This document shows positions 4,000 to 43,429 of a stretch of DNA of 64,000 nt, in pieces. The DNA lies in the IMG/VR virus record IMGVR_UViG_3300049215_000771, positions 310,001 through 374,000 of that record; one strand, given 5' to 3'. Below the pieces are notes generated by a model, which worked only from the letters and a program-made list of their open reading frames with translations, made no database searches and had not been told where the DNA came from. The position numbers were made by a program, and so were the translations under genes. Each line of letters starts with the position of its first letter. Within the stretch, counting starts at the first letter, position 1.

Positions 4000-4019
4000 G
4001 ATGGTATATAGGAGGAAAT

Positions 4020-4502
4020 ATGCTCACTCTTGTCGTATCTCACGTCATCGGACTTACCAGGGAGCAACGGTATGATCTTCACGCCGGCAAACCCGTCGAT
4101 GTCGTTGGCGTCAGTGTGCCAGTTTGGTTCGAGAAAGGCAGCACTTCCGAGCCGGCCAACGAAGTGTTTGTCAACTACAAGCTAACGAACAAGAAAGAAT
4201 CATTCCCGATTAAGATGACCAAGTGTGGCTTCGAGATCAACATCCCCCAGGCCAACCCGGAAGCCGAGGCTGAGATCAAACAACTGCCCAAAGACGCCCT
4301 AGAAATTGTAGGGGTAAACACCAATTTTCCAAACTCTACAAACCTGCTCGATCTCAAGGACGGCGGGTCTGAGTTTCTGCAATTCCGTCAATATGCAAAA
4401 ACCAATTTGATTGCAGACGGGCAAGTAACTCGCAAACCTTTGAACATTGTTCATTGCGTCGAGATCAGGCCAATCGAAGATGTGATTCAGACGTTAAGTT
4501 AG
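4020..4502 (+). CDS. Hypothetical protein
   Basis: GGAGG RBS and TATATAG motif upstream. Confidence 0.65.
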   Translation: MLTLVVSHVIGLTREQRYDLHAGKPVDVVGVSVPVWFEKGSTSEPANEVFVNYKLTNKKESFPIKMTKCGFEINIPQANPEAEAEIKQLPKDALEIVGVNTNFPNSTNLLDLKDGGSEFLQFRQYAKTNLIADGQVTRKPLNIVHCVEIRPIEDVIQTLS

Positions 4503-5003
4503 TGGGGCATCTCGAAGCGACAAAGACATGCGCATGTTGATGCTGTCACCTGAGTTGAGTGTGACTTCTTGGGACAAAATAACGCTGGCAAGCAACACGC
4601 CTGAGTTATCGCTGGTTGTTGTCATGAACAAATTATTCACTGGCCCCCATGACCCACCATTCGCCTGGAAGGTAATAATGCTGCCAATGGCCTGGTAGAT
4701 GTTGGTTTCATTGATTGTAACTTGTTGAATGTTCCAGCCAGAACTACTGCTCACTTGTTGTCGCAAGTAACCATTGGCAGTGGGTTCATCAACCAGGCTT
4801 TCCATCGTGTCATCGACGGTGATGGTCCCTCGATTATCGAGGCCCATGAAATAGTTGGCGGGCGGCGTGACCCCACCGAAAAGAACACTCAGGAAATACT
4901 GCTCGGCGAGTGTGTGCAGGGTGTTGTAGAGATTTTTATCCTCCCAAATCACTTTCCCATCTCGAATATGCTGTATCTCAATGACTTTCAGGAGATGCTT
5001 CAT
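4494..5003 (-). CDS. Putative virion structural (tail fibre/baseplate-type beta) protein
   Basis: EPTANGYLRQ...ITFQANGGSWG...VTLNSGDS resembles phage tail-associated domains; T/S/N-rich. Confidence 0.5.
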   Translation of the reverse strand: MKHLLKVIEIQHIRDGKVIWEDKNLYNTLHTLAEQYFLSVLFGGVTPPANYFMGLDNRGTITVDDTMESLVDEPTANGYLRQQVSSSSGWNIQQVTINETNIYQAIGSIITFQANGGSWGPVNNLFMTTTSDNSGVLLASVILSQEVTLNSGDSINMRMSLSLRDAPLT

Positions 5004-5569
5004 TTTGCCCCTATCTTGATCTTGGTTCTGGTGCCTGTTTTCGAGGAAAAGATAAGTTCGGCGGGGCTGAAAGTCTCTCCTTTGAACACTTCTTCGCCGA
5101 CGAACTTATCTGCTTTGCCTTTCTTCACATAAGCGATGGTGACGTGTGGGATGTAGGACGGATAAGCATCGGTAGCCGGCAAGTTGTTGCTCAAAGTCTT
5201 GTGCAGTTTGTGCAACATCTCGCTTTCTACTTCAATCTTCAACACATCAAACTTGTCATTTGACGTGAACAAGGACATCCTCCCAAGCACCACTTCGCCA
5301 GTTCGCTCGTTGTGAAGCACCTTCTCGACCGGGCGATGATCGGAAGAATGCAGCCCATATAACACAGTAATGTGCGGTTCTTCTTCACGACCGAAGGTTG
5401 GGTCGTCCGGGTTTGTGTACAACATGGAATCAGGAACGTGATGGTCGCTCCATTCCAGGATGTTTTGGGCCAATTTATCTGGCAAGTTTACTTGTGTCGA
5501 TGAGTATTGGTATATTACATCATATCCATCAACCAAAAATTGCCTGAATGTTGTCGTCTTCCCCCTCAT
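5000..5569 (-). CDS. 2H phosphoesterase (2'-5' RNA ligase fold; Acb1/T4 gp57B-like)
   Basis: Two HxT motifs: EPHITVLY and YIPHVTIAY. Confidence 0.8.
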   Translation of the reverse strand: MRGKTTTFRQFLVDGYDVIYQYSSTQVNLPDKLAQNILEWSDHHVPDSMLYTNPDDPTFGREEEPHITVLYGLHSSDHRPVEKVLHNERTGEVVLGRMSLFTSNDKFDVLKIEVESEMLHKLHKTLSNNLPATDAYPSYIPHVTIAYVKKGKADKFVGEEVFKGETFSPAELIFSSKTGTRTKIKIGAK

Positions 5570-5885
5570 ATTCGGAGTTCTTTCTTCTTCGCTGGTGAAT
5601 TTCTTCGATTTTCTTTTTCTCCACAGCGATCATCTCGTCGATCAAGTCGATGGTTTGTTTGACAGCGAAGGGGTTGACAACCTGACCATTGATAACCGGC
5701 CAGTTGTTGGTTTGTGCCGGTTGTTTCTGCCATTGTTCACGCCGCTCACGCTTTGTTTCAATCCGCTCCAGTCGTTCGAGAGCCGCCCGGATTTGAGCCT
5801 TGACTTCCGCCAAGGCGAAATCTTCTGGTACGTTTCTATAAGCCTGCGACAACAGGCTTTTTACTTCTTGTGTGTTATGCTTCAT
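5529..5885 (-). CDS. Hypothetical coiled-coil protein
   Basis: Coupled ORF in the minus-strand operon downstream of terminase. Confidence 0.6.
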   Translation of the reverse strand: MKHNTQEVKSLLSQAYRNVPEDFALAEVKAQIRAALERLERIETKRERREQWQKQPAQTNNWPVINGQVVNPFAVKQTIDLIDEMIAVEKKKIEEIHQRRRKNSEYEGEDDNIQAIFG

Positions 5886-6829
5886 TATTCTGCCTTTCTA
5901 AACAGATCGAGCCAACGGATAGGTGCCTCGCTGATCTCGCTCATTAGTTTGTTGTTTTTCAACTTAACCCGCCACACATCCATTCCCGGCGAGTCGGGAG
6001 CCTCCTCCCGCAATACCGACCCAACAGGCAAAGAAGACTCAATGCCCAGGGCGATCTCACGCTTCACCTGCTCAAACCTGTGACGATCTTTGGGATGCGC
6101 CACAACGTACAAGACCTGAAACGCTGATCTTGGTTTCGTTCCCTGGAGAGAACGAACCAACTGCGTGTAATCTTCTTGAACACTCATCGGAAATCCATCT
6201 ACATCCTGAATATCGTACAATTCCAAACCTGTAGGTTTGGTATTGTTGCACATGAAAGTCATGGATGGTGGTTGCCCAACAAGCACCTGGCCCTCATTAG
6301 ATACCCAGGAAGCATCCGGCATGAGAGCCTGGAAAATTACACTACTGCCGTTCCATTTGTGGACCCGGCCAATAGCCCGTTCGATAAGTTCCACCATCTT
6401 CGCTGCATTCTTCTGAGTTTCAGCAAGAATTGACTCTACAACTCGGTTGGCGGTTTCTTTGGAGAATTGAATCTCCTTGCCGTAGAGGTAACTGCGGCAC
6501 TCGAACAAACCATTCTCGATCACCCCGACTATATCGGGGTCTTTTCCTCTCGCCCAGGCAGTGAACTGCTCGTGCGCCCGCCTAATTTTGGCCGGATCAC
6601 GGGCAGCCACAGCCATGAGCATTTCTTCCATTCTCGGATACGTCAGCTTGACCAAATTCGGGCGCAAGTCTAGTATCTCGGCCAAGTGCGTAAGGAAACA
6701 TTCACCCCGCTTGAGTGGATCAAGCAAAGTGTCATAAACATCACGCTCCAGCGACTCCTTGTAGTGATCCAAGGAGAGTTCGACGGCTGGACGCTTCTTA
6801 GATTCCAGATACTTGGCAAACGACGACAT
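5885..6829 (-). CDS. Hypothetical protein (MSSFAKYLES leader)
   Basis: ORF directly after the terminase stop; start at ATG 6829. Confidence 0.65.
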   Translation of the reverse strand: MSSFAKYLESKKRPAVELSLDHYKESLERDVYDTLLDPLKRGECFLTHLAEILDLRPNLVKLTYPRMEEMLMAVAARDPAKIRRAHEQFTAWARGKDPDIVGVIENGLFECRSYLYGKEIQFSKETANRVVESILAETQKNAAKMVELIERAIGRVHKWNGSSVIFQALMPDASWVSNEGQVLVGQPPSMTFMCNNTKPTGLELYDIQDVDGFPMSVQEDYTQLVRSLQGTKPRSAFQVLYVVAHPKDRHRFEQVKREIALGIESSLPVGSVLREEAPDSPGMDVWRVKLKNNKLMSEISEAPIRWLDLFRKAE

Positions 6830-6830
6830 A

Positions 6831-8711
6831 TCACCACCCAAATTCTTTGAGGAGTTTGTCGTATCTACGCTGGACTCCGAACATTACTGCTGGCATGATA
6901 CTATCCTTGCCGGGAGCCAAGATGTCTACGTTTTCCTCATCAGTAAGCAAATCTTCCGGCTTGCCTTCCATCAACTCCCGCTTGATTTCTTCGTACAAGT
7001 CCGTTTTGAATGTGTTTGTCAGTTCCTTGGGGACATCGGCACCCATTGGGATATTGCGAACGAGAGCATCACGCACATACAAAGCCATACACATCGCCAT
7101 GATAGCGTCATCGTGCTGGCCCTTCTGCGCCTCAGCTTTCTTCGTCACCGGGTTGTACTCGAACGTGTGCAACTCAGTTACAAACCGGAAGCTGTTGACA
7201 CGCATCGTGTTGTCAATCAAGCGATTCTGAAGTGCCTGAAGATACAAAGGTCGATTTGTGCTGTTCAGCTTGATGCCAGGTTTTGTAGCTGCTATACCTT
7301 TCGTTCCCTCATAGTGCAAGTTGTCGTAGAACAACGTGTGCTGGAGGTAATTCAACACGGACCCGCCTGGACCCATGTTTTCAACAACCACCAAGGCGTT
7401 GTTGTAGTAGATCGCCACTTCGTTCAGAACTTGAGCAAAAATGTGTGGCGGAATGGTGTTGGAGTAAAATTCGGCAACCTGTTCCAAAGTTGCTGTGTTG
7501 AGAACCTGGAACACGGAATTGTCGTTGTTCTCGCATTGACCTTCGGCCACGTCCACACCGATGATGTACTCCTGGCCGTCTTCTGGTTCCTTCCAAAGCC
7601 AAAGGGCACCCTTGTTGTGTTCATCCTCGATCTGCGACACACGCCCGGCCCGGTTACACCACTTGGAGAACATCTTGCGTGTCGGGTAGTTGTTCATCGT
7701 CTGCTCATGCAGGCGACGGATGACGTTTTCTTTGAAGTAGGTGTCACCAGAACCCAGGAACTCACGCAAAACTTCCTGGAGCAGACCCTTCTCGCCAAGT
7801 TGTTTCTTCTGATCGTCGAACCATTCCTCGTTGTTGTAATCCGGGTGTTCCCAATAGTCCAAGTCAATGACGTGGAACTTGTTACGTTTCTCCTTGCCGT
7901 CGATGTAGGTCTGATGATACCAGTTACCCAAACCGTTGACTGTAGAAACCAAGGTGCAACCACCACCCGTGGACAGTACCGGCCACATAGCCTTCCAGTG
8001 AGTGTCCATGTCAGGAATGAAAGCTGCTTCGTCAACGATCAGGAACGTAACAGACTTACCACGAGCAGCTTCCGGGGAGTAGAACTTCAGAGCGCCGCCT
8101 GTTTGTGTGAATACCTTCAAGTGGTCATTCCATTTGCTGTCCTTTGGTGGCTTCAGCCATTCCGGGAAGTTCTCGATGGCACGGTCGGCCATCATGCCGA
8201 TGTCTGTAGCTTCACGGTCAGTTTTGGACAGTAACATCACTTGCTGATCGGTATCGAACATGCAGCGCCATAGCCCCCACAGGAGGGTTACGGTTGTCAG
8301 ACCACCCTGACGGAACTTGGAAATGATGTTGAAACGAAAATTCTCGTAGTCATTGATGACACGCCGCTGGTATCCATACAATATGAATGGAATGAGGCCA
8401 CGCAGGGGGTGCAAAATCTTTACATACTTGTGGCAAAAATAGGCAAAGCTATTGGTGCATTTGATGATCTCCCGCTGCTGACGAACCTTGTCGTAGCTCT
8501 CGATGCTTGCCATTGGCTCGTCGGGGTCGATCTCAAGTTCGTATTTGTCAAACGTGTAGTACGGGACTAACTTGCCCGTCGCTTTGTCTGTGTAAGTCTC
8601 GTCGTACTCGCCAGCATAGTAGTCCTTGAGTGTTTTGTACTTGCTACGCCAGACTGAATCTGCTTTACTTTTGAAGAACACCTGTGGTGGTGCTTTGATT
8701 TCTTGGTCCAT
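6831..8711 (-). CDS. terL: Terminase large subunit (T4 gp17-like)
   Basis: SKFRQGGLTT (Walker A region), FLIVDEAAF (Walker B), YIIGVDVAEG and HDDAIMA nuclease motifs; AAAGGA RBS before ATG 8711. Confidence 0.95.
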   Translation of the reverse strand: MDQEIKAPPQVFFKSKADSVWRSKYKTLKDYYAGEYDETYTDKATGKLVPYYTFDKYELEIDPDEPMASIESYDKVRQQREIIKCTNSFAYFCHKYVKILHPLRGLIPFILYGYQRRVINDYENFRFNIISKFRQGGLTTVTLLWGLWRCMFDTDQQVMLLSKTDREATDIGMMADRAIENFPEWLKPPKDSKWNDHLKVFTQTGGALKFYSPEAARGKSVTFLIVDEAAFIPDMDTHWKAMWPVLSTGGGCTLVSTVNGLGNWYHQTYIDGKEKRNKFHVIDLDYWEHPDYNNEEWFDDQKKQLGEKGLLQEVLREFLGSGDTYFKENVIRRLHEQTMNNYPTRKMFSKWCNRAGRVSQIEDEHNKGALWLWKEPEDGQEYIIGVDVAEGQCENNDNSVFQVLNTATLEQVAEFYSNTIPPHIFAQVLNEVAIYYNNALVVVENMGPGGSVLNYLQHTLFYDNLHYEGTKGIAATKPGIKLNSTNRPLYLQALQNRLIDNTMRVNSFRFVTELHTFEYNPVTKKAEAQKGQHDDAIMAMCMALYVRDALVRNIPMGADVPKELTNTFKTDLYEEIKRELMEGKPEDLLTDEENVDILAPGKDSIMPAVMFGVQRRYDKLLKEFGW

Positions 8712-8775
8712 ATACCCATCCTTTCTAATTAAGGCCATAATTGGCATGGGTATATAGCCACTTTGGGAGGAAAAC

Positions 8776-19185: not shown

Positions 19186-19235
19186 AAAGCCTCCAGGGTA
19201 TATAATCCTGCACGTTTCAATTGCAACGGAGGCGT

Positions 19236-20902: not shown

Positions 20903-23470
20903 ATGCCTATTTGGAGTGACTTCTTCAAGTTGTTCACTTATGCCGGCGAGAAAGACCCGCTGGCTAAGAAGAAGGATACACGAAACCTACAAGGTGCCGG
21001 TATCGGTCAACCTGACGTGTATCCAACGCTTGGCGGTGAAGGCCAGGCGGGTGGTGCTGGTGGGGGCCAGGGTCAAGCCCAGCTTCGCCAGTCCTATGAC
21101 ATGATCGACACCACGACTTTGACAAACCGCTCCATGCGGTACAAAGAGTACGAGCGTCTTCGCAACGTCCCGGAAATCGAAATGACCATGACGGTACTGG
21201 CCGATGAAGCCTGTGTAGCAGGCAGTACCCCGATTGCCACACCATTCGGTTTCCAAACCATCGAATCATTGGCTGCCAAGTACAAACCGGAAGAACGCTT
21301 CCTTTGTTACTGCTGGGACAGCCACACTCAAGATTACACGTTAGGCTGGGCCTATCACCCACGCCTAGTCAAAAGAGCGCCAACCGTCACAGTTATACTG
21401 GACGACGGCCACACTTTCACTGTGACCCACGACCACCGCATCATGCGGAAGAATGGTGCCTGGGTTCAGGCTGGCGAGATAGTACGAGGCGATGAATTGA
21501 AGCCTTTCTACCGCCTGCCCGCCAGTTACCGACACACCAAGCAAAAAGCCAAACAATTCCCACGCATCTTCTCCACCAACAAAGGCTGGATCACTGAACG
21601 CCAGTTGTTGGAAGAATGGAAAACCGGCAAGGAAGACCCAAAGCTGGAGAAGGTCAATCGGGCGATGCGCATGATCTGCGGCGGCTTGAACGTCCGTCAG
21701 ATTGCCAGATTGATGGAATATGACTGGCAAACCATTGAGAATTGGCTTCGGGCCGAGGGCTTCTCCCATCGAGAAGTCAAGATTCTATCGAAGCATCGTG
21801 AGTCTCGCCGGGTAGTCGGCGTTCACGAAAGCCCTGAGATGGACGTTTACGATATGTCCGTCGAAGAACACAAGTGTTTTGCCACAGATTGTGTCATCAT
21901 GCACAACTGCCAGAAAGATGAAGAAGGCAACGTATTCAAGGTAATTTGCAGCAGTGCCGCCGCCAAGAAAGAAGTTGAGTTCCTGTTGCGTCATCGGAAC
22001 ATGCTCAACCTGAATCGTTTGTCATGGACCTGGTTCAAGAACTTGTGCATCATGGGCGATTTCTTTGTAGAAACCGTCATCAACCCGGACAGCCCCAAGG
22101 AAGGCATCTACAAGGCCGTGCCACTCCCACCGGAGAGCATGTACCGGATCGAAACAACCAAGGGCAAGCTGATTGAGTTCCAGCAGTCTAAGGAAGGCCC
22201 GGACTACCAGGCTATCGTGCGTGCGCCGATGGTTTCTCAGGCGGGCGAGGCCGAATTGAACCAAAGCATGGCAATTCGCTTTGCCAACAACCAGATCGTA
22301 CACTTCAGGATTGGTGACGACCGCAAAACTTTCTACCCATACGGACAATCCCTCATCGAGCCGGCTCGTAGCCCCGCCCATCAACTGAGGTTGATGGAAG
22401 ATGCTATGGTCGTGTATCGACTTACCCGTGCCCCTGAACGTAGGGTGTTCTATGTGGACGTTGGACAGTTACCTCCGTTCAAGGCTGAAGCCTTCATTGA
22501 AAGGTTGAAGGATCAGTTCAGGAAGCGTAAGATAGCACAGAATAGGGGAGTTCCTGGGGCCAACCAAGTTGAAGAAAGGTGGCAGCCACCCGCCCAGGAC
22601 GAAGATTACTGGTTGCCTATTAGACCGCAAAGCCAGACAAGGATTGAAACGCTTCCGGGTGCGCAGAACCTTGGAGAGATCGACGATGCGATTTACTTCA
22701 GGAACAAGTTGTTTACGGCATTGAACTTCCCAAAAAATTACTTCGCCAACGAAGACCCTGGTGCGACTAGAATTACATTGTCGGCTCAGGATGTGAAGTT
22801 TGCCCGTATGGTGGAGAGGCTTCAAAGCCACTTCGAGGACGGACTGTTGGAATTGGCCGAGAGGCATCTTCAGTTGCGTGGCTACCCGGAGGAAGCCTAC
22901 GAGGATTTGAAGATCAAGATGACCCCACCTTCCGACTGGAGGGAGTTGTCCAGGGCTGAAGTCGTCAACGGACGTTATGGCAATGCGACCACACTCAAGT
23001 CTGGTCAGTTGATGGCTGATTGGGACATCATGGTGAAGATTCTCAAGTTCACGGAAGACGAAGCTGAGGAGATGTTGAGCCGCTTGAAGATTCAGAAGTT
23101 GGAAGACCTGAAGCTACAGGTACTCGCTCAGAACCCACAGTTGTTGGGTATCGGTATTCCTGGACAAGACCCGCAACCCGGACAGGAACTTGGTTCCGAG
23201 CCGGGCGGTCCAAGTCCGAATCCGTCGCCCGATGGCGGCGGTCAGCAGCCGCCTCCCGATCAGGGGGCACCGCCTGCTGCTCCTGGCGGGGACCAACCGC
23301 CTCCAGGTGGCGATCAAGGACCGGCTCCCGCTGGCGCATCGCCTGCTGAGGGAAGTCCGCTACCGGAAGTCGAGCCTGAAGATGTCAAGAAGTTCGATCT
23401 TGAGATTCAGGACTACGAGACAGAGCAGGACGAGGAAGACATCGACCACAGCATAGGTGAAGACAAGTGA
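20903..23470 (+). CDS. gp20: Portal protein (T4 gp20-like), intein-containing, Pro/Gly-rich C-terminal extension
   Basis: RYKEYERL, YGQSLIEPAR, EDAMVVYRLTRAPERRVFYVDVG, EDYWLP, IETLPGAQNL. Confidence 0.93.
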   Translation: MPIWSDFFKLFTYAGEKDPLAKKKDTRNLQGAGIGQPDVYPTLGGEGQAGGAGGGQGQAQLRQSYDMIDTTTLTNRSMRYKEYERLRNVPEIEMTMTVLADEACVAGSTPIATPFGFQTIESLAAKYKPEERFLCYCWDSHTQDYTLGWAYHPRLVKRAPTVTVILDDGHTFTVTHDHRIMRKNGAWVQAGEIVRGDELKPFYRLPASYRHTKQKAKQFPRIFSTNKGWITERQLLEEWKTGKEDPKLEKVNRAMRMICGGLNVRQIARLMEYDWQTIENWLRAEGFSHREVKILSKHRESRRVVGVHESPEMDVYDMSVEEHKCFATDCVIMHNCQKDEEGNVFKVICSSAAAKKEVEFLLRHRNMLNLNRLSWTWFKNLCIMGDFFVETVINPDSPKEGIYKAVPLPPESMYRIETTKGKLIEFQQSKEGPDYQAIVRAPMVSQAGEAELNQSMAIRFANNQIVHFRIGDDRKTFYPYGQSLIEPARSPAHQLRLMEDAMVVYRLTRAPERRVFYVDVGQLPPFKAEAFIERLKDQFRKRKIAQNRGVPGANQVEERWQPPAQDEDYWLPIRPQSQTRIETLPGAQNLGEIDDAIYFRNKLFTALNFPKNYFANEDPGATRITLSAQDVKFARMVERLQSHFEDGLLELAERHLQLRGYPEEAYEDLKIKMTPPSDWRELSRAEVVNGRYGNATTLKSGQLMADWDIMVKILKFTEDEAEEMLSRLKIQKLEDLKLQVLAQNPQLLGIGIPGQDPQPGQELGSEPGGPSPNPSPDGGGQQPPPDQGAPPAAPGGDQPPPGGDQGPAPAGASPAEGSPLPEVEPEDVKKFDLEIQDYETEQDEEDIDHSIGEDK
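21212..21907 (+). mobile_element. Intein (232 aa) in portal, with internal HTH and no recognisable endonuclease
   Basis: A|CVAGST block A; VTHDHRIM block B; VYDMSV block F; IMHN|C terminus. Confidence 0.88.
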
Positions 23471-24738: not shown

Positions 24739-25083
24739 TCAAGTGTTAGGCATTTCTCCGTGCGCCGAGTCCGCACTGTTCGGAACTACCACGTCACCAT
24801 CACCATGATCGAACCCATGACCGAAGGACGCTCCCATGCGTGGCTTCTTCTTGCTGGGCTTCGGGTGGGCGTTCTTGTGATTCATCTTGTCCAGTTCGAT
24901 CTGAATGTCCGGGTCTTGTTTGGCAAGACGTTGTAGAAACGAGACTACTTCGGAGTGATATTTCTCGGCGGCGTGCTGAAGCGCCTTCATGATACCACTT
25001 TCTTCCCCATCCTTGTCGTCGGCCTGATCGACATCCAGAAAGCTATTTTCCTTCAAACCTACGAACTGACTGAATGTTTTCAT
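24739..25083 (-). CDS. Small protein with MKTFSQF leader
   Basis: GAGGG RBS, TACATAG upstream. Confidence 0.65.
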   Translation of the reverse strand: MKTFSQFVGLKENSFLDVDQADDKDGEESGIMKALQHAAEKYHSEVVSFLQRLAKQDPDIQIELDKMNHKNAHPKPSKKKPRMGASFGHGFDHGDGDVVVPNSADSAHGEMPNT

Positions 25084-25257
25084 AATCCCTCGCTGTTTTT
25101 GCATCTCACTGCATACCTATGTAGTGAGGGACACTGAATTTGAAGGCCCAACCCCGAAGAATTAAAGGGGTCGTTAATATATACCTCTATATGCGGGGGC
25201 ATCCGAGTTGTTGGAATGATTCGGAGAACAACACACAGCACTAGGGAGTCGCAAACT

Positions 25258-27219: not shown

Positions 27220-27906
27220 ATGAACAAAGAAGAGTTGCAACTACTCATTGAATGTTGCTCAGTTCCCGGCTGCTACATGGAAATGAATCTGCACGAGTCA
27301 TCTGACAGGAAGTCGGGATTGACTAGGTTCAGGGGAAAATTTCAGGAAGCCGAGGCTGTCAACAAAAACAAACGGATGTACCCACACGCCGTCCTTGACG
27401 AAAACGTGAAGAAATTACAAGAAGTGGTTTCTGCGAAAGGTCTGGTAGGCGAGTTGGACCACCCAACGGACAGCATCATCCATTTTGAGAAGGCGTCCCA
27501 CGTCGTCACTAGATTGTGGTGGGAAGGCAACAACTTGATGGGTGAAGGCGAGATACTACCTACGCCATGTGGTGAGATTCTAAACGCTCTCATTAAAAGC
27601 GGCGTGCGAGTCGGTATCAGCAGTAGGGGAGTCGGCAGTGGAAAAGTTGATGAGAATGGAATTCTCGTCATCAGTGATAGCTACAAGCTAATCACTTTCG
27701 ACGCCGTGGCCGATCCTAGCACCTTCAACGCTTTTCAGGCGAAGATAGGTGGAAAGAGCGAAACTTACATTCCCACTCAAAATACCAGAAGTGCTGCGAA
27801 AAACGAAAGTAGCAGCATACATAAGGTAAATAAGGACGCACTAATTGCTTGTTTGGGTGGGATCATCACTAAGGAAACTAGCACAATCAAAGCGAGGTTA
27901 GGCTAA
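27220..27906 (+). CDS. gp21: Prohead protease (T4 gp21-like)
   Basis: NKNKRMYP, GELDHP, SHVV, TPCG, GISSRGVGS, FDAVADPS. Confidence 0.95.
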   Translation: MNKEELQLLIECCSVPGCYMEMNLHESSDRKSGLTRFRGKFQEAEAVNKNKRMYPHAVLDENVKKLQEVVSAKGLVGELDHPTDSIIHFEKASHVVTRLWWEGNNLMGEGEILPTPCGEILNALIKSGVRVGISSRGVGSGKVDENGILVISDSYKLITFDAVADPSTFNAFQAKIGGKSETYIPTQNTRSAAKNESSSIHKVNKDALIACLGGIITKETSTIKARLG

Positions 27907-28805
27907 TGGACAAGATTGTAGAAGCACTGAAGAAGCTACTGCCTGATTCCGAGGTTAGCGAAGTTGCCGGTGCGGTGAAGGATATGTTGGAGGCAGCGAA
28001 GGCTGAACTCGAAGCTGAGTACAACGCAAAGTTGGAAGAAGCCTACACCGAGCTATCCACCGAACTTGCAACAGCCGAGAAGACCGCCGAAGCAGGCTAT
28101 CAGGAAGCGTACTCCATTATTGGAGAGTTGCGCAATCGCCTGGAGCTTCAGGGTGAGGAATACAAGCACGCACTGGAAGAAGGCTACGAAGAAGCCTACC
28201 AGATGCTCAAGGGTGAACGTGACAAGAACAACACCCTCGAAGTCGAAATGTACGAGGAGTACGACCGCAAGCTGGCCGAGATGAAGGAATACATTGTCGA
28301 TAAGGTCGATCAGTTCCTTCGGTTCAAGGGCGGCGAGATTTATGAGCAGGCCAAGCGAGACATTTTGAATGACCCACGCATGGCTGAACACAAGGTCGCA
28401 CTCGACAGAATTGTGGACATCACTTCTCAGTATCTTTCTGATGAAGATTTCAACGGCGCTACTTCTTCTAAGCTAGACGAAGCAATGAAGGCTGTTGAAG
28501 AAATGAAGGGACAACTCCGAATTATGGAGGCCCGGAACATCAGACTTTCAACAGAGAATACTAAGTTGAATGAGACTGTCCGCCAGGCTCAGGAATTGAT
28601 TACTGAGTCCCGTAGGACTGCTTCTTCCGAGAAGAAGGAAGCCGTCATTACAGAACAGAAAGAAAGAGCGCAGAAAGCAAAGAACGTAACGGGGAGCGGA
28701 CATACCGTCGATAAGACGGATGGGGTGGTTATTGCGGAATATGCCAACCCCGATCACGAGATGAACGATTTGCTCGTTCTCTCTGGAGTTAAGAAGACCC
28801 AATAA
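27906..28805 (+). CDS. gp22: Prohead scaffold protein (T4 gp22-like)
   Basis: Acidic coiled coil between protease and capsid genes. Confidence 0.85.
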   Translation: MDKIVEALKKLLPDSEVSEVAGAVKDMLEAAKAELEAEYNAKLEEAYTELSTELATAEKTAEAGYQEAYSIIGELRNRLELQGEEYKHALEEGYEEAYQMLKGERDKNNTLEVEMYEEYDRKLAEMKEYIVDKVDQFLRFKGGEIYEQAKRDILNDPRMAEHKVALDRIVDITSQYLSDEDFNGATSSKLDEAMKAVEEMKGQLRIMEARNIRLSTENTKLNETVRQAQELITESRRTASSEKKEAVITEQKERAQKAKNVTGSGHTVDKTDGVVIAEYANPDHEMNDLLVLSGVKKTQ

Positions 28806-28842: not shown

Positions 28843-30279
28843 ATGAACGCAAATTCCAAATTCCTGAACGAAGCTAGAGAGTTGGAAGGTCGTTGGGGCA
28901 AGACTGGCCTCTTGGAAGGCATTGAAGATCGCTACATCCGATCCGCCACCGCCGTTCTGCTTGAAAACCAGCGCCTCATGAACGAAGTTTCGACCGACAC
29001 TGGCGACATCGCTCAGTTCAAGCGTATCAGCATCCCGTTGGTACGTCGTATTTACCCGCAGCTAATTGCTAACAAGATTGTATCTGTTCAGCCATTGCTC
29101 GGCCCAACAGGTTTGGTGTACTACCTGCGCTTCCGGTACTCGTCCAACAAGGGCGCTACTCGTGGAGCGGACAACAACGGCGGCTTCCCGGCTGACGATG
29201 TGAACACCCTCATGCAGTTGGCTGATGGTACTGCCAACTTGGACATTTTCTACACGCACCAGTTCGTGCAGAACGAGTCCACCAGCACCGACAACGGTGG
29301 CAACGTCACTTCGGCGTACAGCCCGTTGGAACACACCCCGATCCTGGCCGGCACCATCACGGGCACGATCTATGACGGCTCCCTCGCAGTGCAGACCTTC
29401 GTGGTTTCCTCGACCGGAACCTTCACCTTCTCCAACATCGGTAGCCCAGCTACCTACGTCACCGCTGGTTCTTTGAACCTGACGACTGGCGAGTTGGTGT
29501 TGACTTGGAACTCGGCCCCAGGCCCGAACCACGCTGTACTTTCCTACGAGTACAACATGGAATGTCAACAAGATTTGCCGGAAATCAACTTGGTCATTGA
29601 GTCGGAAGAAATTGCCGCCAAGACCCGCAAGTTGAAGGCTGTATGGTCCTACGAAGCGCAGCAGGACTTGCGCTCGCAGCACAACCTCGACGCCGAGGCT
29701 GAGTTGACGGCTGTATTGGCCCAGGAAATCAACCTCGAAATCGACCGTGAAGTGTTGACGGACCTCCGTAACAACAGCGGTACGGTAGCGGCATGGGATT
29801 TCAACACGGCATTGGGCGAAACCATCAAGGAGAAGTATGAGTCGCTGTATGTGAAGGTTGTTGAAATCAGCAACGTCATCCACAGGAAGACTCTTCGTGG
29901 TGGTGCAAACTGGATGGTAACTTCCCCTGAAGTTGCTTCCATCTTCGAGACGGCAACCGCTGGTTTCGCACCGGCTCCATCTGAGACGTTCACTTCGTCG
30001 CTGGGTATCCAGTACGTCGGAACCGTCAACAACAGGTGGCGGTTGTACAAAGACCCGTTGTTCCCATCGAACCAGATTCTCATGGGGTACAAGGGTGATT
30101 CTTACATGGATTCGGGTTACTTCTATTGCCCCTACGTCCCGCTCACGCAGACGCCTGTGGTTTTGGACCCTGAGTCCTTCTGTCCGAGGAAGGGTATCCT
30201 TACACGTTACGGGAAGAAACTGTTGCGTGAAGGGGCCAAGTTCTACGCCAGGATGTCCATCGCCAACTTCGTCATCTAA
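28843..30279 (+). CDS. gp23: Major capsid protein (T4 gp23-like)
   Basis: LLENQ, IPLVRR, VQPLLGPTGLVYYLR, RKLKAVWS.E..QDL, LDAEAEL, YCPYVPL, GILTRYG. Confidence 0.97.
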   Translation: MNANSKFLNEARELEGRWGKTGLLEGIEDRYIRSATAVLLENQRLMNEVSTDTGDIAQFKRISIPLVRRIYPQLIANKIVSVQPLLGPTGLVYYLRFRYSSNKGATRGADNNGGFPADDVNTLMQLADGTANLDIFYTHQFVQNESTSTDNGGNVTSAYSPLEHTPILAGTITGTIYDGSLAVQTFVVSSTGTFTFSNIGSPATYVTAGSLNLTTGELVLTWNSAPGPNHAVLSYEYNMECQQDLPEINLVIESEEIAAKTRKLKAVWSYEAQQDLRSQHNLDAEAELTAVLAQEINLEIDREVLTDLRNNSGTVAAWDFNTALGETIKEKYESLYVKVVEISNVIHRKTLRGGANWMVTSPEVASIFETATAGFAPAPSETFTSSLGIQYVGTVNNRWRLYKDPLFPSNQILMGYKGDSYMDSGYFYCPYVPLTQTPVVLDPESFCPRKGILTRYGKKLLREGAKFYARMSIANFVI

Positions 30280-35423: not shown

Positions 35424-35427
35424 GGGT

Positions 35428-36462
35428 ATGAGAATCGCATCATTCACCATGTTCGGCCAATACCCACATGGGATTGACCTTCATGTTCGCAACCTGAAGT
35501 GGGCGCTCACAAAAGACGACCATGTTTACATTGTCACGCTTCCGAAAATCATCGAGGATTTCAAACTGGAAAGTGGTGGCAACGTCACTTACATTCCGTT
35601 CCATCATATTGATGAAGGCGACTTCATCAATTTTTGGGCCGGGTTTCCGGGCATCATCAAGAACCTGAACATCAAACCGCAATGGTTTCAGTTCATGGAA
35701 GGCGACATCTGGTTCCACAAGAAGCCAGGGTTCGTGCCGAGAAACCCGAAGGAAATAGCCAACTACCTGCCGCTGCAAACCCACTACCATGCGGTCATGG
35801 CAGGCAACAAGCTGTTGCAGCCAAGGGTATGGGAAGGCGGCACGCTCGTTCATGGAGATGTCGTTCGTCGGGCCATCGACAACGACATCTCTTTTTCTTT
35901 CGTCAAGGAGTTCTTCTGCGAGTTCGATCCCGACTATTGGGAAGACCTGATGGGCGGTAGGATCAGCCTGCGCTATTTCAAGGCTCCAGACACATTCGAC
36001 GAGTTCAACCTCTACTGTGCCCTAATCGAAAAAAGCAAGATTTGCCACTTCGACCGGGCCGTTCATCTTCGAGGCCCGGAGAGTTTACACCGAAAATTTC
36101 CCCATCTCTACAACACTTGTACTGACGAACAATTGGTAGAACCATCGAAGGTTTTGCCCTACCTGTGTGTGTATGGCGCAATCGCACCGTACTACATTGA
36201 TGGTCACTGGAAAGGCATGATCCAGTGGCACAAAATGAAGCCTGAGTTTCAGAAGGAATTCGTGCGTTTACTGCCGACTGCGAGCGAATGGATGAAGCCA
36301 GAAGAATATGTGCGCCTGGTGGAGATCACAGAAGCGATCAGAAATAAGGATCACCCTTTGTCCAATCCAGCCCCAGCATCTCCTTCACTTTGGGTAAGAC
36401 CCTCCAAAGTTCGTAATCGTCGTATTCGTGGACGGTGGGCACCCAATCGCAAACATCTATGA
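35428..36462 (+). CDS. Hypothetical protein, possibly glycosyltransferase-like
   Basis: 344-aa ORF; aromatic-rich, EGDIWF in a DxD-like position. Confidence 0.45.
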   Translation: MRIASFTMFGQYPHGIDLHVRNLKWALTKDDHVYIVTLPKIIEDFKLESGGNVTYIPFHHIDEGDFINFWAGFPGIIKNLNIKPQWFQFMEGDIWFHKKPGFVPRNPKEIANYLPLQTHYHAVMAGNKLLQPRVWEGGTLVHGDVVRRAIDNDISFSFVKEFFCEFDPDYWEDLMGGRISLRYFKAPDTFDEFNLYCALIEKSKICHFDRAVHLRGPESLHRKFPHLYNTCTDEQLVEPSKVLPYLCVYGAIAPYYIDGHWKGMIQWHKMKPEFQKEFVRLLPTASEWMKPEEYVRLVEITEAIRNKDHPLSNPAPASPSLWVRPSKVRNRRIRGRWAPNRKHL

Positions 36463-37012
36463 AATGCTTTTCGGCTTTCTTGATGACTTCCTTGGCGACG
36501 GCTTTGGGGTCTTTCTCCTCAGCGCCGATGCCAAGGATTCGCATTTTGTTGGTGATTTCAACACTGTGAACATCTAGGTTGTCGATCAGCAACCACTTCC
36601 TGCCAGCCAGGTGATACTTCTCAGCAAGTTCGCCTGGCTTTGTTTCTTTGGCGCTGTGCATTCCCTTGACGTATTTCGACCAGCCCAACACTTCAACGAC
36701 TTTCTCAACGTAGTCGATGCGGCTGTGGCTCAAGATGATGAAATCGGCGAACTTGGAAATGGCTTTGACGAGGTTGGTCGCTCCGGGTCGTGGAAACAAG
36801 TACATATCCTGATCTTCGGCATGGATCAGGCGCACATCCGGGTAGGGCTTCTTGTTTGGAACGATCATTTTGGCAAATTCTTTGTTCTGTGGATGGTCCT
36901 TCAGCCAGCCAATTTCCATATTGTGAACGAGGGTTTCGTCCAGATCGGAGAACACGGCGGGGCGTCCACTTTCATTTTGTTCAAGCCAAAGGCCAAATTG
37001 CATGAGGTTCAT
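36338..37012 (-). CDS. HAD-superfamily NIF/FCP1-like phosphatase
   Basis: SDLDETL (DxDxT), RPGA..L, LLIDN. Confidence 0.8.
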   Translation of the reverse strand: MNLMQFGLWLEQNESGRPAVFSDLDETLVHNMEIGWLKDHPQNKEFAKMIVPNKKPYPDVRLIHAEDQDMYLFPRPGATNLVKAISKFADFIILSHSRIDYVEKVVEVLGWSKYVKGMHSAKETKPGELAEKYHLAGRKWLLIDNLDVHSVEITNKMRILGIGAEEKDPKAVAKEVIKKAEKHFIDVCDWVPTVHEYDDYELWRVLPKVKEMLGLDWTKGDPYF

Positions 37013-42579: not shown

Positions 42580-42822
42580 ATGAAGACATTTCTCGAATGG
42601 CTGAAATTACGAGAAGAAGGCGGCTTGTTCGGCAACCCAGGCACACCCTATCCCGATGGCTTGACGCCCACCACTTCTAAGAAACTTGGCCCCAACAAAG
42701 GCAAACTCGACAATTCCGGCATGAGCGGCGGTCCTGGTCGCAAAAGTGCTGGTGGAATGCCTGCGGCTGGTGGTGCGCCCATTCCTCCCGCTGGTGGAAA
42801 TACCCCTGCACCACCTAAATAG
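42580..42822 (+). CDS. Small Gly/Pro-rich protein with MKTFLEWLKLREE leader
   Basis: Leader motif. Confidence 0.7.
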   Translation: MKTFLEWLKLREEGGLFGNPGTPYPDGLTPTTSKKLGPNKGKLDNSGMSGGPGRKSAGGMPAAGGAPIPPAGGNTPAPPK

Positions 42823-42826
42823 GGGT

Positions 42827-43429
42827 ATGATTAGTTTCAGGACATGGCTTGAAGAACATGATGATTTTGAGGCAGAAGCCGGACCCCACATCAAAGTGCT
42901 GCTGCCGAGCGTTAAACAAAGCAGCAACTACGACTGCGGTGCTGCTGCGCTTCGTGCCATAGCGGAATACTTCAAAGTCGGCCCTGAGAAGGAAGCCGAC
43001 TTCATCAAGGCTTGTAAAACCACCAAGAAGGACGGCACCGACCCGGATGGCATCATCAGGGCGGCTCATGCCTTCGGCCTCAACACCAGGGCCAAGGCGG
43101 GGATGTCCATTGAGGAATTGAAATCCTTCCTAGACATGGGCAGGCCCATCATGTGTCTGATTCAAGCCTACGGCGAGCCAGACGAGTACCACAAGCCACA
43201 AAGCGGGCACTACGTCAATGCCATCGGTTACGACGGCAATCACATCTATTTTGAAGACCCGTCAATGAAAGGCAACCGTGGGATGTTGCCTTTCAAGGAA
43301 TTCAAGAAACGCTGGCATGACAAAGGCGAGGGAGGCAAAAGCTACACCCGCTGGGGCGTCGTCATCTGGAAGCAGTCCGACGAAGGAACTGATCGAGAAT
43401 ACGTTCCCCAGGCGAAGAAGATTCCATGA
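42827..43429 (+). CDS. C39-like cysteine peptidase with MISFRTWLEE leader
   Basis: VKQ...DCGAAAL, GRPI, GHYV..IGYD...Y..DP. Confidence 0.85.
   Translation: MISFRTWLEEHDDFEAEAGPHIKVLLPSVKQSSNYDCGAAALRAIAEYFKVGPEKEADFIKACKTTKKDGTDPDGIIRAAHAFGLNTRAKAGMSIEELKSFLDMGRPIMCLIQAYGEPDEYHKPQSGHYVNAIGYDGNHIYFEDPSMKGNRGMLPFKEFKKRWHDKGEGGKSYTRWGVVIWKQSDEGTDREYVPQAKKIP

What the first reader, a model, noticed from the sequence alone, without database searches (positions are those of the whole stretch)
5000..5569. Acb1-like 2H phosphoesterase with packaging-like leader in the terminase operon
Seen: two HxT motifs and an N-terminal TFRQFLVD segment. Established: T4 Acb1 (gp57B) is a 2H phosphoesterase that degrades CBASS cyclic oligonucleotides. 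Inference: candidate anti-CBASS/anti-type III CRISPR nuclease, possibly virion-delivered.
Basis: partly seen in the sequence, partly recalled or inferred. Interest (0 to 1): 0.6.

Follow-up and report, generated by a model that had tools for sequence, protein, structure and literature searches.

The report
Capsid-targeted 2H phosphodiesterase of a huge phage
A 533-kb phage encodes, just after its DNA-packaging gene, a small phosphodiesterase related to the anti-CBASS enzyme Acb1 whose first 14 residues look like the phage T4 signal that loads proteins into the capsid for injection, and about 25 other proteins of the same phage carry that signal too.

Summary
Window 5000-5569 (minus strand) is a real 189-aa gene of the 2H phosphoesterase superfamily, with HIT at 66-68 and HVT at 142-144. 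It lies in a same-strand run of overlapping genes downstream of the large terminase, in a 532,729-bp phage from a moss metagenome.

Residues 7-14 (TFRQFLVD) match the phage T4 capsid targeting sequence at all four positions mapped by T4 genetics: two aromatics three residues apart, then an aliphatic, then an acidic residue. The genome has a T4-type portal, gp21 prohead protease, acidic scaffold and gp23 capsid gene.

The same leader opens about 22-30 unrelated ORFs, including NUDIX, C39 peptidase, NIF/HAD phosphatase and DUF3293 proteins. Conservation is at the peptide level. About a third of the 2H homologues carry the leader.

The 2H gene keeps its place between terminase and portal in relatives of 77-613 kb. 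Profile comparison puts Acb1 nearest among characterised families; fold comparison puts ThpR/LigT slightly ahead. Acb1's C-terminal lid (W147, E141) has no counterpart here.

Verdict: virion delivery is well supported circumstantially. The anti-CBASS substrate is plausible but unproven. I call it a new variant of known kinds.

The parts
5000..5569 (-). 189-aa 2H phosphoesterase gene: disordered leader at residues 1-16, globular domain at residues 20-189
   Evidence: ORF list. Pfam PF13563 43.4 bits and PF23474 Acb1 34.5 bits. AF2 model pLDDT 89. 2H structures at Z 12-16.
5528..5569 (-). Leader peptide, residues 1-14 (MRGKTTTFRQFLVD): a T4 capsid-targeting-sequence-like signal with F8 and F11 as the aromatics, L12 aliphatic and D14 acidic
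   Evidence: Compared with T4 IPI, IPII and IPIII N-termini and with the T4 genetics in PMC9026906. pLDDT is below 50 with a short helix at 8-15. About 35 of 120 homologues have it.
5366..5374 (-). First catalytic HxT motif (H66-I-T68)
   Evidence: Read directly from the sequence. H66 and T68 are invariant in 31 homologues.
5138..5146 (-). Second catalytic HxT motif (H142-V-T144), inside the extended motif AT..Y..Y.PHVTIAY that is shared with Acb1
   Evidence: Read directly from the sequence. Invariant in homologues. Aligned to the Acb1 stretch GATHDFDDYTPHITLSY.
5529..5885 (-). 118-aa ORF of unknown function, immediately upstream, overlapping the 2H start by 41 nt
   Evidence: ORF list. No family match. 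A 113-114-aa ORF sits in the same place, also overlapping, in relatives.
5885..6841 (-). 318-aa ORF of unknown function between TerL and the 118-aa ORF
   Evidence: ORF list. No family match. Present as 313-322 aa in the relatives. The more distant relatives have 240-307-aa ORFs here with the order of the two small genes swapped.
6831..8747 (-). Large terminase subunit (T4 type); its likely start is the ATG at 8747
   Evidence: Pfam Terminase_6N and 6C, PHROG 2 at E 2.7e-44. An ATG start three bases after CTATATA gives 638 aa, in line with 605-643 aa in relatives.
8751..8757 (-). CTATATA promoter-like heptamer three bases before the TerL ATG; candidate promoter of the operon holding the 2H gene
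   Evidence: Genome-wide CTANATA analysis. Inference only; no transcript start was mapped.
4494..5003 (-). 169-aa ORF downstream (4-nt ATGA overlap), weakly like the podophage fibre protein Gp80
   Evidence: Pfam PF23140 28 bits, cut-off 27. The same family follows the 2H gene in a relative.
20903..23470 (+). T4 gp20-type portal protein with an intein-like insertion
   Evidence: Pfam Portal_T4 252.9 bits; Intein_splicing 33.7 bits, which is below its cut-off. The same architecture occurs in relatives.
27220..27906 (+). T4 gp21-type prohead serine protease, the enzyme that in T4 removes capsid targeting sequences after L/I-x-E
   Evidence: Pfam Peptidase_S77 99.6 bits. 33-43% identical to gp21 of T4-like phages.
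27906..28805 (+). 299-aa acidic, Glu/Ala/Lys-rich protein between protease and capsid gene: candidate gp22-like scaffold, the presumed docking partner of the leader
   Evidence: Position and composition. No family match. Its role is inferred from T4 gene order.
28843..30279 (+). T4 gp23-type major capsid protein
   Evidence: Pfam Gp23 289.5 bits.
42827..43429 (+). Another leader-bearing gene (starts MISFRTWLEE): a C39-like cysteine peptidase, preceded by CTAAATA-N5-ATG
   Evidence: Pfam Peptidase_C39 46 bits.
42580..42822 (+). Another leader-bearing gene (starts MKTFLEWLKLRE), 80 aa, of unknown function, preceded by CTACATA-N5-ATG
36338..37012 (-). Another leader-bearing gene (starts MNLMQFGLWLEQNE): an NIF/HAD-type phosphatase
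   Evidence: Pfam NIF 35.3 bits.
57031..57258 (+). Another leader-bearing gene (starts MRLSFKDWLHE), 75 aa, of unknown function, preceded by CTACATA-N4-ATG
24739..25104 (-). Another leader-bearing gene inside the head module (MKTFSQFVGLKE from the internal Met at 25083), of unknown function

Best explanation
The gene encodes a metal-independent phosphodiesterase of the 2H superfamily whose catalytic tetrad is H66/T68 + H142/T144. It is made late, from the operon that starts with the large terminase. [quoted passage not shown] It docks the protein onto the scaffolding core of the assembling prohead, so the enzyme is enclosed in the capsid and ejected into the next host cell with the DNA.

In homologues the leader ends in Glu and would be clipped by the gp21-type prohead protease. 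In this phage it ends in Asp. In T4 an Asp at that position allows targeting but blocks clipping. Once in the host, the enzyme most likely removes a nucleotide-based alarm before phage genes are expressed. Candidate substrates are cyclic di- or oligonucleotides of CBASS or type III CRISPR type, 2'-5'-linked oligonucleotides, or 2',3'-cyclic phosphate ends.

Shown here: the gene, the fold, the catalytic motifs, the operon and its conserved place in the head module, the leader and its spread over about 25 proteins, and the T4-type head machinery. Inferred: docking, packaging, ejection and the substrate.
For: Enzyme:
- Pfam and PHROG hits.
- AF2 model at pLDDT 89, with Foldseek and VIA hits only to 2H enzymes, Z 12-16.
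- H66, T68, H142 and T144 invariant in 31 homologues.

Leader matches the T4 CTS:
- T4 IPI starts MKTFKEF; IPII and IPIII start MKTYQEFIAE.
- PMC9026906 reports that the first 10 residues of IPIII suffice, targeting depends on residues 4 and 7, processing on 8 and 10, gp21 cuts after L/I-x-E, and Asp at 10 blocks processing but not targeting.
- Ours reads F8..F11-L12-V13-D14 in that register.
- A five-position regex picks IPI, IPII, IPIII, gp61.1 and one unannotated ORF in T4. It picks 22 ORFs including ours in this genome (6.7 expected at most), 4 in KVP40 and 2 in S-PM2.
- Against shuffled genomes the count is 21 versus 0-4.
- Conservation is at the peptide level: five Leu codons and seven Lys/Arg codons are used.
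- Residues 1-16 are disordered in the model.

The leader is modular:
- It is present in about 35 of 120 2H homologues, absent in most, and C-terminal in 2-3.
- In this genome it is attached to NUDIX, DUF3293, C39 peptidase, NIF/HAD phosphatase and about 20 unknown proteins.
- The related 595-kb phage LR756511 has the same leaders.

Head machinery: gp20 portal, gp21 protease at 99.6 bits, acidic scaffold-like protein and gp23 capsid gene.

Context:
- TerL-x-x-2H...portal-protease-scaffold-MCP is conserved in contigs of 77, 164, 207 and 613 kb.
- The nearest 2H domain among cultured phages sits in a 1362-aa polyvalent protein (SprT, 2H, ART-PolyVal, GNAT) between connector and tail genes.
- The best BFVD neighbour is part of a protein of more than 1000 aa. 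'Capsid morphogenesis' and 'structural protein' fusions also appear.
- Iyer et al. 2017 predicted virion-delivered 2H domains that degrade defence nucleotides.

Acb1 relation: PF23474 above threshold. hhalign to the Acb1 family gives 96.5%, E 7e-10, against 17.8% for a ThpR profile.
Against: - No virion proteome, N-terminal sequence or activity exists for this uncultured phage.
- The leader is short. A PSSM trained on this genome ranks T4 IPI only 10th of 1580 candidates and does not rank IPII/III in the top 25.
- Two thirds of the 2H homologues keep the same place in the head module without any leader. The leader is therefore not needed for whatever conserved role the enzyme has.
- The complex prediction of scaffold plus enzyme gave no answer.
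- On substrate: ThpR/LigT structures score higher than Acb1 (Z 16 versus 13). A single-sequence hhalign favours E. coli ThpR (score 39.7 versus 32.0). Acb1's lid Trp147 and Glu141 have no counterpart.
- A conserved core gene is unusual for an anti-defence function.
Confidence: 0.5

Rival explanations
1. It is a cytoplasmic RNA end-healing enzyme, a ThpR/LigT-like 2',3'-cyclic phosphodiesterase. It would work with the phage's RNA ligases to repair tRNAs or other RNAs cut by host anticodon nucleases, and it would not be packaged.
For: The highest structural Z scores are to Thermus TT0787, E. coli LigT and Deinococcus CPDase (Z about 16). hhalign to the single E. coli ThpR sequence gives 80%. TIGR02258 scores 29 bits. 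The genome encodes an Rnl1-like ligase, three PF09414 ligase-like genes and an AAA_33 kinase. Iyer et al. 2021 assign jumbo-phage 2H enzymes to 2',3'-cyclic phosphate processing.
Against: TIGR02258 is far below its 65.7-bit cut-off. The ThpR family profile gives only 17.8%. The kinase-ligase cassette lies at 502-503.5 kb, about 187 kb from the 2H gene, and there is no Tpt1 or RtcB. The gene sits in the head module in every relative examined. Iyer et al. 2017 note that 2H domains of this virion-linked type never associate with RNA ligases. This reading leaves the leader unexplained.
Confidence: 0.2
2. The N-terminal motif is not a capsid signal. It could be a docking peptide for another hub. 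It could also be a by-product of how these genes are built: the promoter heptamer abuts the ATG, giving leaderless or near-leaderless mRNAs, and shared 5' cassettes could spread by recombination. The 2H enzyme would then act in the infected cell like T4 Acb1.
For: Most leader genes carry CTANATA exactly 5 nt before the ATG, so the promoter and the first codons could travel together. A few proteins carry the motif at the C-terminus. Leaderless homologues keep the same genomic place. T4 Acb1 itself is not known to be packaged.
Against: The 2H gene has the leader but no CTANATA of its own, because it lies inside the TerL operon. Codon usage shows selection on the peptide, not the DNA. The motif fits the four positions mapped for the T4 CTS, and the same regex finds the three known T4 internal proteins. 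T4 Alt also has a C-terminal propeptide cut by gp21.
Confidence: 0.15
3. It is a virion-delivered RNase rather than a signal eraser. The 2H domain would act like Usb1/Mpn1, trimming or cleaving host RNAs and leaving 2',3'-cyclic phosphates, as part of host takeover.
For: Usb1 structures are among the top matches (Foldseek ranks 2-7, Z 12-14). Iyer et al. 2017 give this as one of two likely roles for 2H domains fused to MuF or portal domains.
Against: Sequence identity to Usb1 is only 9-12%. The extended motif around the second HxT is shared with Acb1, not Usb1. No RNA-binding extension is present.
Confidence: 0.1

Closest known systems
Acb1 (phage T4 gp57B, Erwinia phage FBB1; Pfam PF23474), the anti-CBASS 2H nuclease
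   Same: Same superfamily and the same HxT/HxT tetrad. The query passes the Pfam Acb1 threshold (34.5 versus 27 bits). The profile-profile match is 96.5% over 137 columns. Both share RE..HxT..Y and AT..[FY]..Y.PH[IV]T[LI].Y. The aromatic residues W74 and F107 of Acb1 align with the invariant F101 and with Y137.
   Different: The core is about 170 residues against about 150. No C-terminal lid is present: W147 and E141 have no counterpart, and the chain ends in a beta-strand instead. The generic 2H model scores higher. Structural Z is 13, against 16 for LigT. This gene is a conserved member of the head module, not a gene of a variable region. It carries a CTS-like leader.
Capsid targeting sequences of the T4 internal proteins IPI, IPII and IPIII (Mullaney and Black 1996, as reviewed in PMC9026906)
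   Same: An N-terminal leader of 10-19 residues with two aromatics three residues apart, then an aliphatic, any residue and an acidic residue. It is shared by otherwise unrelated small proteins of one phage. It co-occurs with gp21 protease, scaffold and gp23 capsid. The T4 cargo has a counter-defence role.
   Different: The phage is a 533-kb uncultured phage rather than a T-even. There are about 22-30 carriers instead of 3. The cargo includes recognisable enzymes (2H, NUDIX, C39 peptidase, phosphatase). The second aromatic is often Trp, and the motif starts 1-7 residues after the Met. This protein has Asp at the cleavage position. Packaging is untested.
Polyvalent proteins and MuF/portal-2H fusions (Iyer, Burroughs, Anand, de Souza and Aravind 2017, PMC5512222)
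   Same: A 2H domain of the same branch lies in late or structural gene neighbourhoods and is predicted to be injected with the DNA. The nearest cultured-phage homologue is such a protein, Tunturi_5 gp321.
   Different: Here the 2H domain stands alone. Delivery would be by a short leader, not by fusion to a structural or multi-enzyme polypeptide.
ThpR/LigT RNA 2',3'-cyclic phosphodiesterases (TIGR02258)
   Same: This is the best overall fold match (Z about 16, rmsd 2.5-2.8 over 153-157 residues), with similar size and the same catalytic tetrad.
   Different: The equivalog score is 29 bits against a 65.7-bit cut-off. The second motif ends in Tyr, not the Arg of HITLLR. There is no link to an RNA ligase gene. 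The profile match is only 17.8%.

Membership tests
2H phosphoesterase superfamily | Two HxT/S motifs on two pseudo-symmetric lobes | tested here: met
   H66-I-T68 and H142-V-T144, invariant in 31 homologues. The model matches only 2H structures, Z 12-16.
2H phosphoesterase superfamily | Significant match to a curated 2H family model | tested here: met
   PF13563 43.4 bits (cut-off 27).
Acb1 (PF23474) | Score above the curated Pfam threshold | tested here: met
   34.5 bits against 27, although PF13563 of the same clan scores higher. hhalign to 14 Acb1 sequences gives 96.5%, E 7.4e-10.
Acb1 (PF23474) | Flexible C-terminal lid (residues 145-152) with W147 that closes over the ligand | tested here: not met
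   After the strand aligned to Acb1 133-140, the query has 12 residues with no aromatic. They are predicted as a beta-strand (181-185).
Acb1 (PF23474) | E141 contacting adenine N6 (invariant in the Acb1 alignment) | tested here: not met
   No conserved Glu at or near the aligned position. The family consensus there is FSSKxGxK.
Acb1 (PF23474) | Base-stacking aromatics Y12, W74 and F107 | tested here: inconclusive
   W74 aligns with the invariant F101, and F107 aligns with Y137 (Y/F/H in the family). The Y12 equivalent is ambiguous between sequence and structure alignments.
Acb1 (PF23474) | Cleaves 3'3'-cGAMP, cUA, cAAA and cAAG 3' of adenosine | not testable with these tools
   This needs an enzyme assay.
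ThpR/LigT (TIGR02258 equivalog) | Score above the equivalog cut-off | tested here: not met
   29.3 bits against 65.7. PF02834 scores 17.7 against 23.3.
ThpR/LigT (TIGR02258 equivalog) | Functional or genomic link to RNA ligation and repair | tested here: not met
   The ligase and kinase genes lie at 93, 102, 392 and 502-503 kb of the genome. The 2H gene lies at 315 kb, in the head module.
T4-type capsid targeting sequence (internal-protein leader) | N-terminal leader with aromatics at positions equivalent to 4 and 7, an aliphatic at 8 and an acidic residue at 10 | tested here: met
   F8, F11, L12 and D14 against Y/F4, F7, I8 and E10 of T4. Asp instead of Glu predicts targeting without clipping, by the T4 precedent.
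T4-type capsid targeting sequence (internal-protein leader) | Shared by several otherwise unrelated proteins of the same phage | tested here: met
   22 ORFs by a strict regex and about 27 by PSSM, with different Pfam families or none.
T4-type capsid targeting sequence (internal-protein leader) | gp21-type prohead protease, scaffolding core and gp23-type shell in the same phage | tested here: met
   Peptidase_S77 99.6 bits, Gp23 289.5 bits, Portal_T4 252.9 bits, and an acidic 299-aa protein between protease and capsid gene.
T4-type capsid targeting sequence (internal-protein leader) | The protein is found inside the capsid and the leader is sufficient for loading | not testable with these tools
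   The phage is uncultured and has no proteome. The complex prediction gave no answer.
Polyvalent proteins | Two or more disparate effector domains in one polypeptide | tested here: not met
   The query is a single 2H domain plus leader. Homologous domains do occur in such proteins.

The most novel reading that the evidence does not exclude
A clade of huge phages (about 0.5-0.6 Mb, T4-type heads) uses a T4-like capsid targeting leader on a repertoire of some 25-30 proteins per genome. These include a 2H phosphodiesterase, a NUDIX hydrolase, a C39 cysteine peptidase, an NIF/HAD phosphatase and a DUF3293/SAM-lyase-like protein. Most are transcribed from a CTANATA element set 5 nt before the ATG. 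The capsid would then carry a pre-made, sequence-predictable enzyme kit that is injected to disarm nucleotide-based and other host defences before any phage gene is expressed. The 2H enzyme would be its conserved core member.
Probability: 0.4. Interest if true: 0.8.

Novelty: new variant of a known kind. Interest (0 to 1): 0.66.

Why it matters
T4's three internal proteins are the textbook case of injected counter-defence. All three are now known to block type IV restriction enzymes (PMC12373910). If the same short address label works in uncultured half-megabase phages, their injected proteins can be read straight from sequence.

The list found here is larger than T4's and is enzymatic rather than made of inhibitors. 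A pre-loaded phosphodiesterase would also answer a timing problem. CBASS and type III CRISPR signals can be made before phage genes are expressed, and an enzyme that arrives with the DNA would already be in place.

The leader is only 14 residues long, and the T4 packaging system accepts foreign cargo. The idea is therefore directly testable in laboratory strains. The enzyme's substrate range would show whether the Acb1 activity extends to a lid-less, ThpR-sized branch of the 2H superfamily.

Tried and rejected
- **Alternative start.** The TTG at Leu33 (157-aa gene call P0002) was rejected. It removes conserved residues and strand 1 of the fold.
- **DNA or RNA element instead of a peptide.** Rejected. 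All synonymous codons are used at the conserved positions.
- **PSSM cross-check in T4.** A PSSM trained on this genome's leaders was applied to T4. The top hit is gp61.1 (MKTFKEFIKE), IPI ranks 10th of 1580, and IPII/III are not in the top 25. The PSSM is over-fitted to Phe/Trp/Leu, so I replaced it with a five-position regex.
- **T4 Acb1 as a CTS protein.** It starts MMEFKDFS and lies next to ipI. The idea was considered but not adopted, because the second Phe is not conserved in the Acb1 family.
- **Complex prediction** of the scaffold-like protein plus the 2H protein gave no answer (score 0.00). This is not evidence either way.
- **Sigma-70 promoter and terminator scan** of 3900-9000 showed no enrichment: 8 versus 4.8 +/- 2.3 and 8 versus 5.1 +/- 2.6.
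- **T4 gp55 late sigma factor.** A single-sequence search of the genome found no match, which is not conclusive. 'Late promoter' for CTANATA therefore stays an inference. The portal, protease, scaffold and capsid genes have SD-like sites and no CTANATA.
- **Literature.** Nothing was found on the Burkholderia phage BCSR5 phosphodiesterase (PDB 9q2g), or on capsid targeting in huge phages.
- **RNA libraries.** Contigs 100% identical to parts of the gene occur in moss and plant metatranscriptome runs. Contigs cannot prove transcription, so this is used only as a weak hint.
- **The large representative-protein search** was not used. The family scans and word searches had already settled the family.
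Full report
**1. What is there**

Window 5000-5569 holds a 189-aa ORF on the minus strand.
- Its translation has HITVLYG (H66, T68) and HVTIAY (H142, T144). These were verified on the DNA at 5366-5374 and 5138-5146.
- It matches Pfam 2_5_RNA_ligase2 (43.4 bits) and Acb1 (34.5 bits, cut-off 27), and PHROG 755.
- The only PDB sequence match is Acb1 of phage FBB1 (E 0.033), over the second motif.
- An AlphaFold2 model built on 31 homologues has mean pLDDT 89. Residues 1-16 fall below 50 with a short helix at 8-15, and residues 20-189 form a confident globular domain.
- Foldseek and VIA-align find only 2H enzymes.
- The gene is single-copy in its genome.

**2. Which start codon**

One gene call in the databases starts at a TTG (Leu33), giving 157 aa. 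The ATG at 5569 overlaps the upstream ORF by 41 nt. The long form is right for three reasons.
- Homologues align over 96-100% of the length.
- S23, S24 and P30 are nearly invariant.
- The first strand of the fold (23-28) lies upstream of Leu33.

Relatives show the same overlapping arrangement.

**3. The genome and the operon**

The window is bases 310,001-374,000 of a 532,729-bp virus record. The DNA occurs in moss metagenomes. Its best phage relatives are 484-642-kb uncultured phages.

Five genes lie on the minus strand with ends overlapping by 1-41 nt:
- the T4-type large terminase (6831-8747);
- a 318-aa ORF;
- a 118-aa ORF;
- the 2H gene;
- a weakly Gp80-like ORF.

The window also holds a T4-type head module: gp20 portal with an intein-like insert, gp21 prohead protease (99.6 bits), a 299-aa acidic Glu/Ala/Lys-rich protein in the gp22 position, and gp23 capsid protein (289.5 bits).

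The order ferritin | TerL - two small ORFs - 2H ... portal - protease - scaffold - capsid recurs in contigs of 77, 164, 207 and 613 kb. Their 2H proteins are only 42-62% identical to this one. The 2H gene is therefore a conserved member of the head and packaging module of this clade, not a floating accessory gene.

**4. The leader**

Residues 7-14 read TFRQFLVD. Taken from the T4 record, IPI starts MKTFKEF, and IPII and IPIII start MKTYQEFIAE.

A review of the T4 work (PMC9026906) reports the following:
- the first ten residues of IPIII suffice for loading into the capsid;
- targeting depends mainly on residues 4 and 7;
- processing depends on residues 8 and 10;
- gp21 cuts after L/I-x-E;
- an Asp at position 10 blocks processing but still allows targeting.

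The query has F8, F11, L12 and D14 in exactly that register. Close homologues read FLAE or FLTE. In this phage the leader may therefore stay attached.

**5. The leader is a shared, modular, peptide-level signal**

Spread within the genome:
- About 27 ORFs begin, within seven residues of an ATG, with [TSN]-F-[KR]-x-[FW]-L followed by acidic residues.
- A regex count gives 21 hits, against 0-4 in reversed or codon-shuffled genomes.
- PSSM scores above 8 bits occur at 6.5e-5 of internal positions of long ORFs, yet in about 27 N-termini.
- At the conserved positions all Leu codon types and seven Lys/Arg codons are used. Selection is therefore on the peptide.

Comparison across phages, using the five-position regex M-x(0-5)-[TSN][FY][KRQ]x[FW]:
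- in T4 it finds IPI, IPII, IPIII, gp61.1 and one unannotated ORF;
- in this genome it finds 22 ORFs, including the 2H gene (at most 6.7 expected);
- in KVP40 it finds 4, and in S-PM2 it finds 2, none convincing.

Carriers with a recognisable family:
- a NUDIX hydrolase;
- a DUF3293 protein with weak SAM-lyase similarity;
- a C39-like cysteine peptidase;
- an NIF/HAD phosphatase.

The rest have no Pfam match.

Distribution within the 2H family:
- about 35 of the 120 listed homologues have the leader;
- seven have a variant, T-[YSH]-R-P-F-[TM]-D;
- most start directly at the first strand;
- two or three carry a similar motif at the C-terminus instead.

T4 Alt also has a C-terminal propeptide cut by gp21. 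The related 595-kb phage LR756511 has at least nine ORFs with the same leader.

**6. How the genes are arranged**

- The heptamer CTANATA is under-represented in the genome: 85 sites against about 260 expected.
- 24 of those sites lie exactly 5 nt before an ATG that opens an ORF, and most of these ORFs start with the leader.
- LR756511 shows 17 such sites, against 2 for the reversed pattern.
- TerL has CTATATA 3 nt before its ATG.
- The 2H gene has none of its own, which fits its place inside the TerL operon.
- The portal, protease, scaffold and capsid genes have Shine-Dalgarno-like sites instead.

I read CTANATA as a promoter-like element that may give leaderless mRNAs. No start site was mapped, and no gp55 homologue was found by a single-sequence search.

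**7. Which 2H enzyme**

Sequence profiles place Acb1 nearest among characterised families.

| Comparison | Result |
|---|---|
| Pfam Acb1 (PF23474) | 34.5 bits, above its 27-bit cut-off |
| TIGR02258 (ThpR) | 29.3 bits, cut-off 65.7 |
| PF02834 LigT_PEase | 17.7 bits, cut-off 23.3 |
| hhalign vs 14 Acb1 sequences | 96.5%, E 7.4e-10, 137 columns |
| hhalign vs 13 enterobacterial ThpR sequences (a less diverse profile) | 17.8% |
| hhalign vs single E. coli ThpR | score 39.7 |
| hhalign vs single T4 Acb1 | score 32.0 |
| VIA-align, ThpR/LigT-type structures | Z about 16 |
| VIA-align, Acb1 | Z 13 over 134 of 137 residues |

Shared with Acb1:
- RE..HxT..Y around the first motif;
- AT..[FY]..Y.PH[IV]T[LI].Y around the second motif;
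- the invariant F101 aligned with W74, and Y137 aligned with F107.

Not shared with Acb1:
- the C-terminal lid with W147;
- E141, which reads adenine. Here the chain ends in a strand with no aromatic or conserved Glu.

This is therefore a separate branch of the superfamily. It is Acb1-like in its motifs and ThpR-like in its size. Its substrate cannot be read from the sequence.

**8. Independent hints of virion delivery**

- The nearest 2H domain among cultured phages (34% identity) lies inside Tunturiibacter phage Tunturi_5 gp321. This is a 1362-aa protein with SprT-like, 2H, ART-PolyVal and GNAT domains, encoded between the head-tail connector and tail genes.
- In BFVD the best structural neighbour (30% identity, TMq 0.79) is a segment of a protein of more than 1000 aa. 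Proteins named 'capsid morphogenesis' and 'structural protein' also match, and Acb1 ranks 22nd.
- Iyer et al. 2017 described such polyvalent proteins as injected with the DNA. They noted that their 2H domains, and solo versions of them, never sit with RNA ligases. They proposed either an RNase role or degradation of defence nucleotides.

**9. RNA repair as the rival**

The genome has an Rnl1-like gene, three PF09414 ligase-like genes and an AAA_33 kinase. It has no RtcB and no Tpt1. The kinase-ligase pair lies at 502-503.5 kb, about 187 kb from the 2H gene. This weakens the repair reading but does not exclude it.

**10. Expression**

Contigs identical to 5133-5299 and 5502-5654 occur in moss and plant metatranscriptome libraries. 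The second stretch spans the start codon and the leader. Contigs from RNA libraries cannot prove transcription, so this is only a hint.

**11. Verdict**

The best explanation is a late-expressed 2H phosphodiesterase, loaded into the capsid by a T4-type targeting leader and ejected with the DNA. Its most likely role is to erase a nucleotide-based defence signal or a cyclic-phosphate product. My rough odds for the separate steps are:
- a 2H phosphodiesterase: about 0.95;
- the leader is a capsid signal: about 0.6;
- the substrate is an immune cyclic oligonucleotide: about 0.3-0.35.

Both components are known kinds. The combination is new as far as the searched literature shows: the extension of the CTS principle to half-megabase uncultured phages, the size and enzymatic nature of the leader repertoire, and a lid-less Acb1-related enzyme fixed in the head module.

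Noticed in passing
Genome-wide. In the window: 42568-42582, 42815-42829, 57020-57033, 35416-35430 (+); 4005-4011, 8751-8757, 55879-55885 (-): The heptamer CTANATA is three-fold under-represented in the genome (85 sites), yet 24 sites lie exactly 5 nt before an ATG that opens an ORF. This is a promoter-abutting-start-codon layout that suggests leaderless mRNAs. Most such ORFs begin with the capsid-targeting-like leader. The same layout occurs in the 595-kb phage LR756511, but not in S-PM2 and barely in KVP40.
   Followed up: partly
window 11244-11272 and 41025-41062 (+): Some CTANATA heptamers sit in the loop of a perfect GC-rich hairpin. At 41035 the hairpin is followed by a run of T, like a terminator. 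This suggests a second, RNA- or DNA-structure role for the heptamer.
   Followed up: no
window 20903-23470 (+): The T4-type portal gene is 855 aa and carries an intein-like insertion with a helix-turn-helix region at about residues 157-335. The same intein-plus-portal architecture is called in relatives of 207 and 613 kb.
   Followed up: no
Phage T4 NC_000866: 18966-19130 (gene 61.1) and 73952-74410 (57B/acb1), loci L054 and L005: T4 gp61.1, a 54-aa protein of unknown function, starts MKTFKEFIKE, a near-perfect internal-protein leader. T4 Acb1 starts MMEFKDFS, with aromatics at 4 and 7, and lies directly beside ipI. However, its second Phe is not conserved across Acb1 homologues.
   Followed up: partly
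window 2-244 (+): A small basic ORF ends with ...ERKTFKQFLEEKGWKPQ. That is the leader motif near a C-terminus rather than an N-terminus. Three 2H homologues (P0023, P0036, P0058) likewise carry F..F[MF]E.F at their C-termini.
   Followed up: partly
Tunturiibacter phage Tunturi_5 PP885688.1 261501-265589 (locus L035:3432-7520): gp321, annotated as a MutT/NUDIX hydrolase, is really a 1362-aa polyvalent protein with SprT-like, 2H, ART-PolyVal, GNAT and DUF3990 matches. No NUDIX hit appears at E <= 0.01. It lies between connector and tail genes.
   Followed up: partly
G000 502315-504430 (outside the window): An AAA_33 kinase gene and a PF09414 RNA-ligase-like gene form a repair-type pair. They sit directly beside a leader-bearing gene of unknown function, 503663-504430, which starts MWSFRKFLVE.
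   Followed up: no
window 3691-3999 (-), 8776-9921 (+), 19221-20309 (+): Unusual cargo for a phage sits around the packaging genes: an Mpo1-like (PF06127) 102-aa membrane protein with its own CTATATA-N5-ATG, an M28-type peptidase divergent from TerL (also next to TerL in relatives, together with a ferritin-like gene), and an M14 zinc carboxypeptidase.
   Followed up: no
window 4400-9000: The phage DNA is held at full or near-full word share by four moss-metagenome runs. Short identical contigs occur in moss and plant metatranscriptome libraries. The habitat therefore appears to be moss-associated microbial communities.
   Followed up: partly
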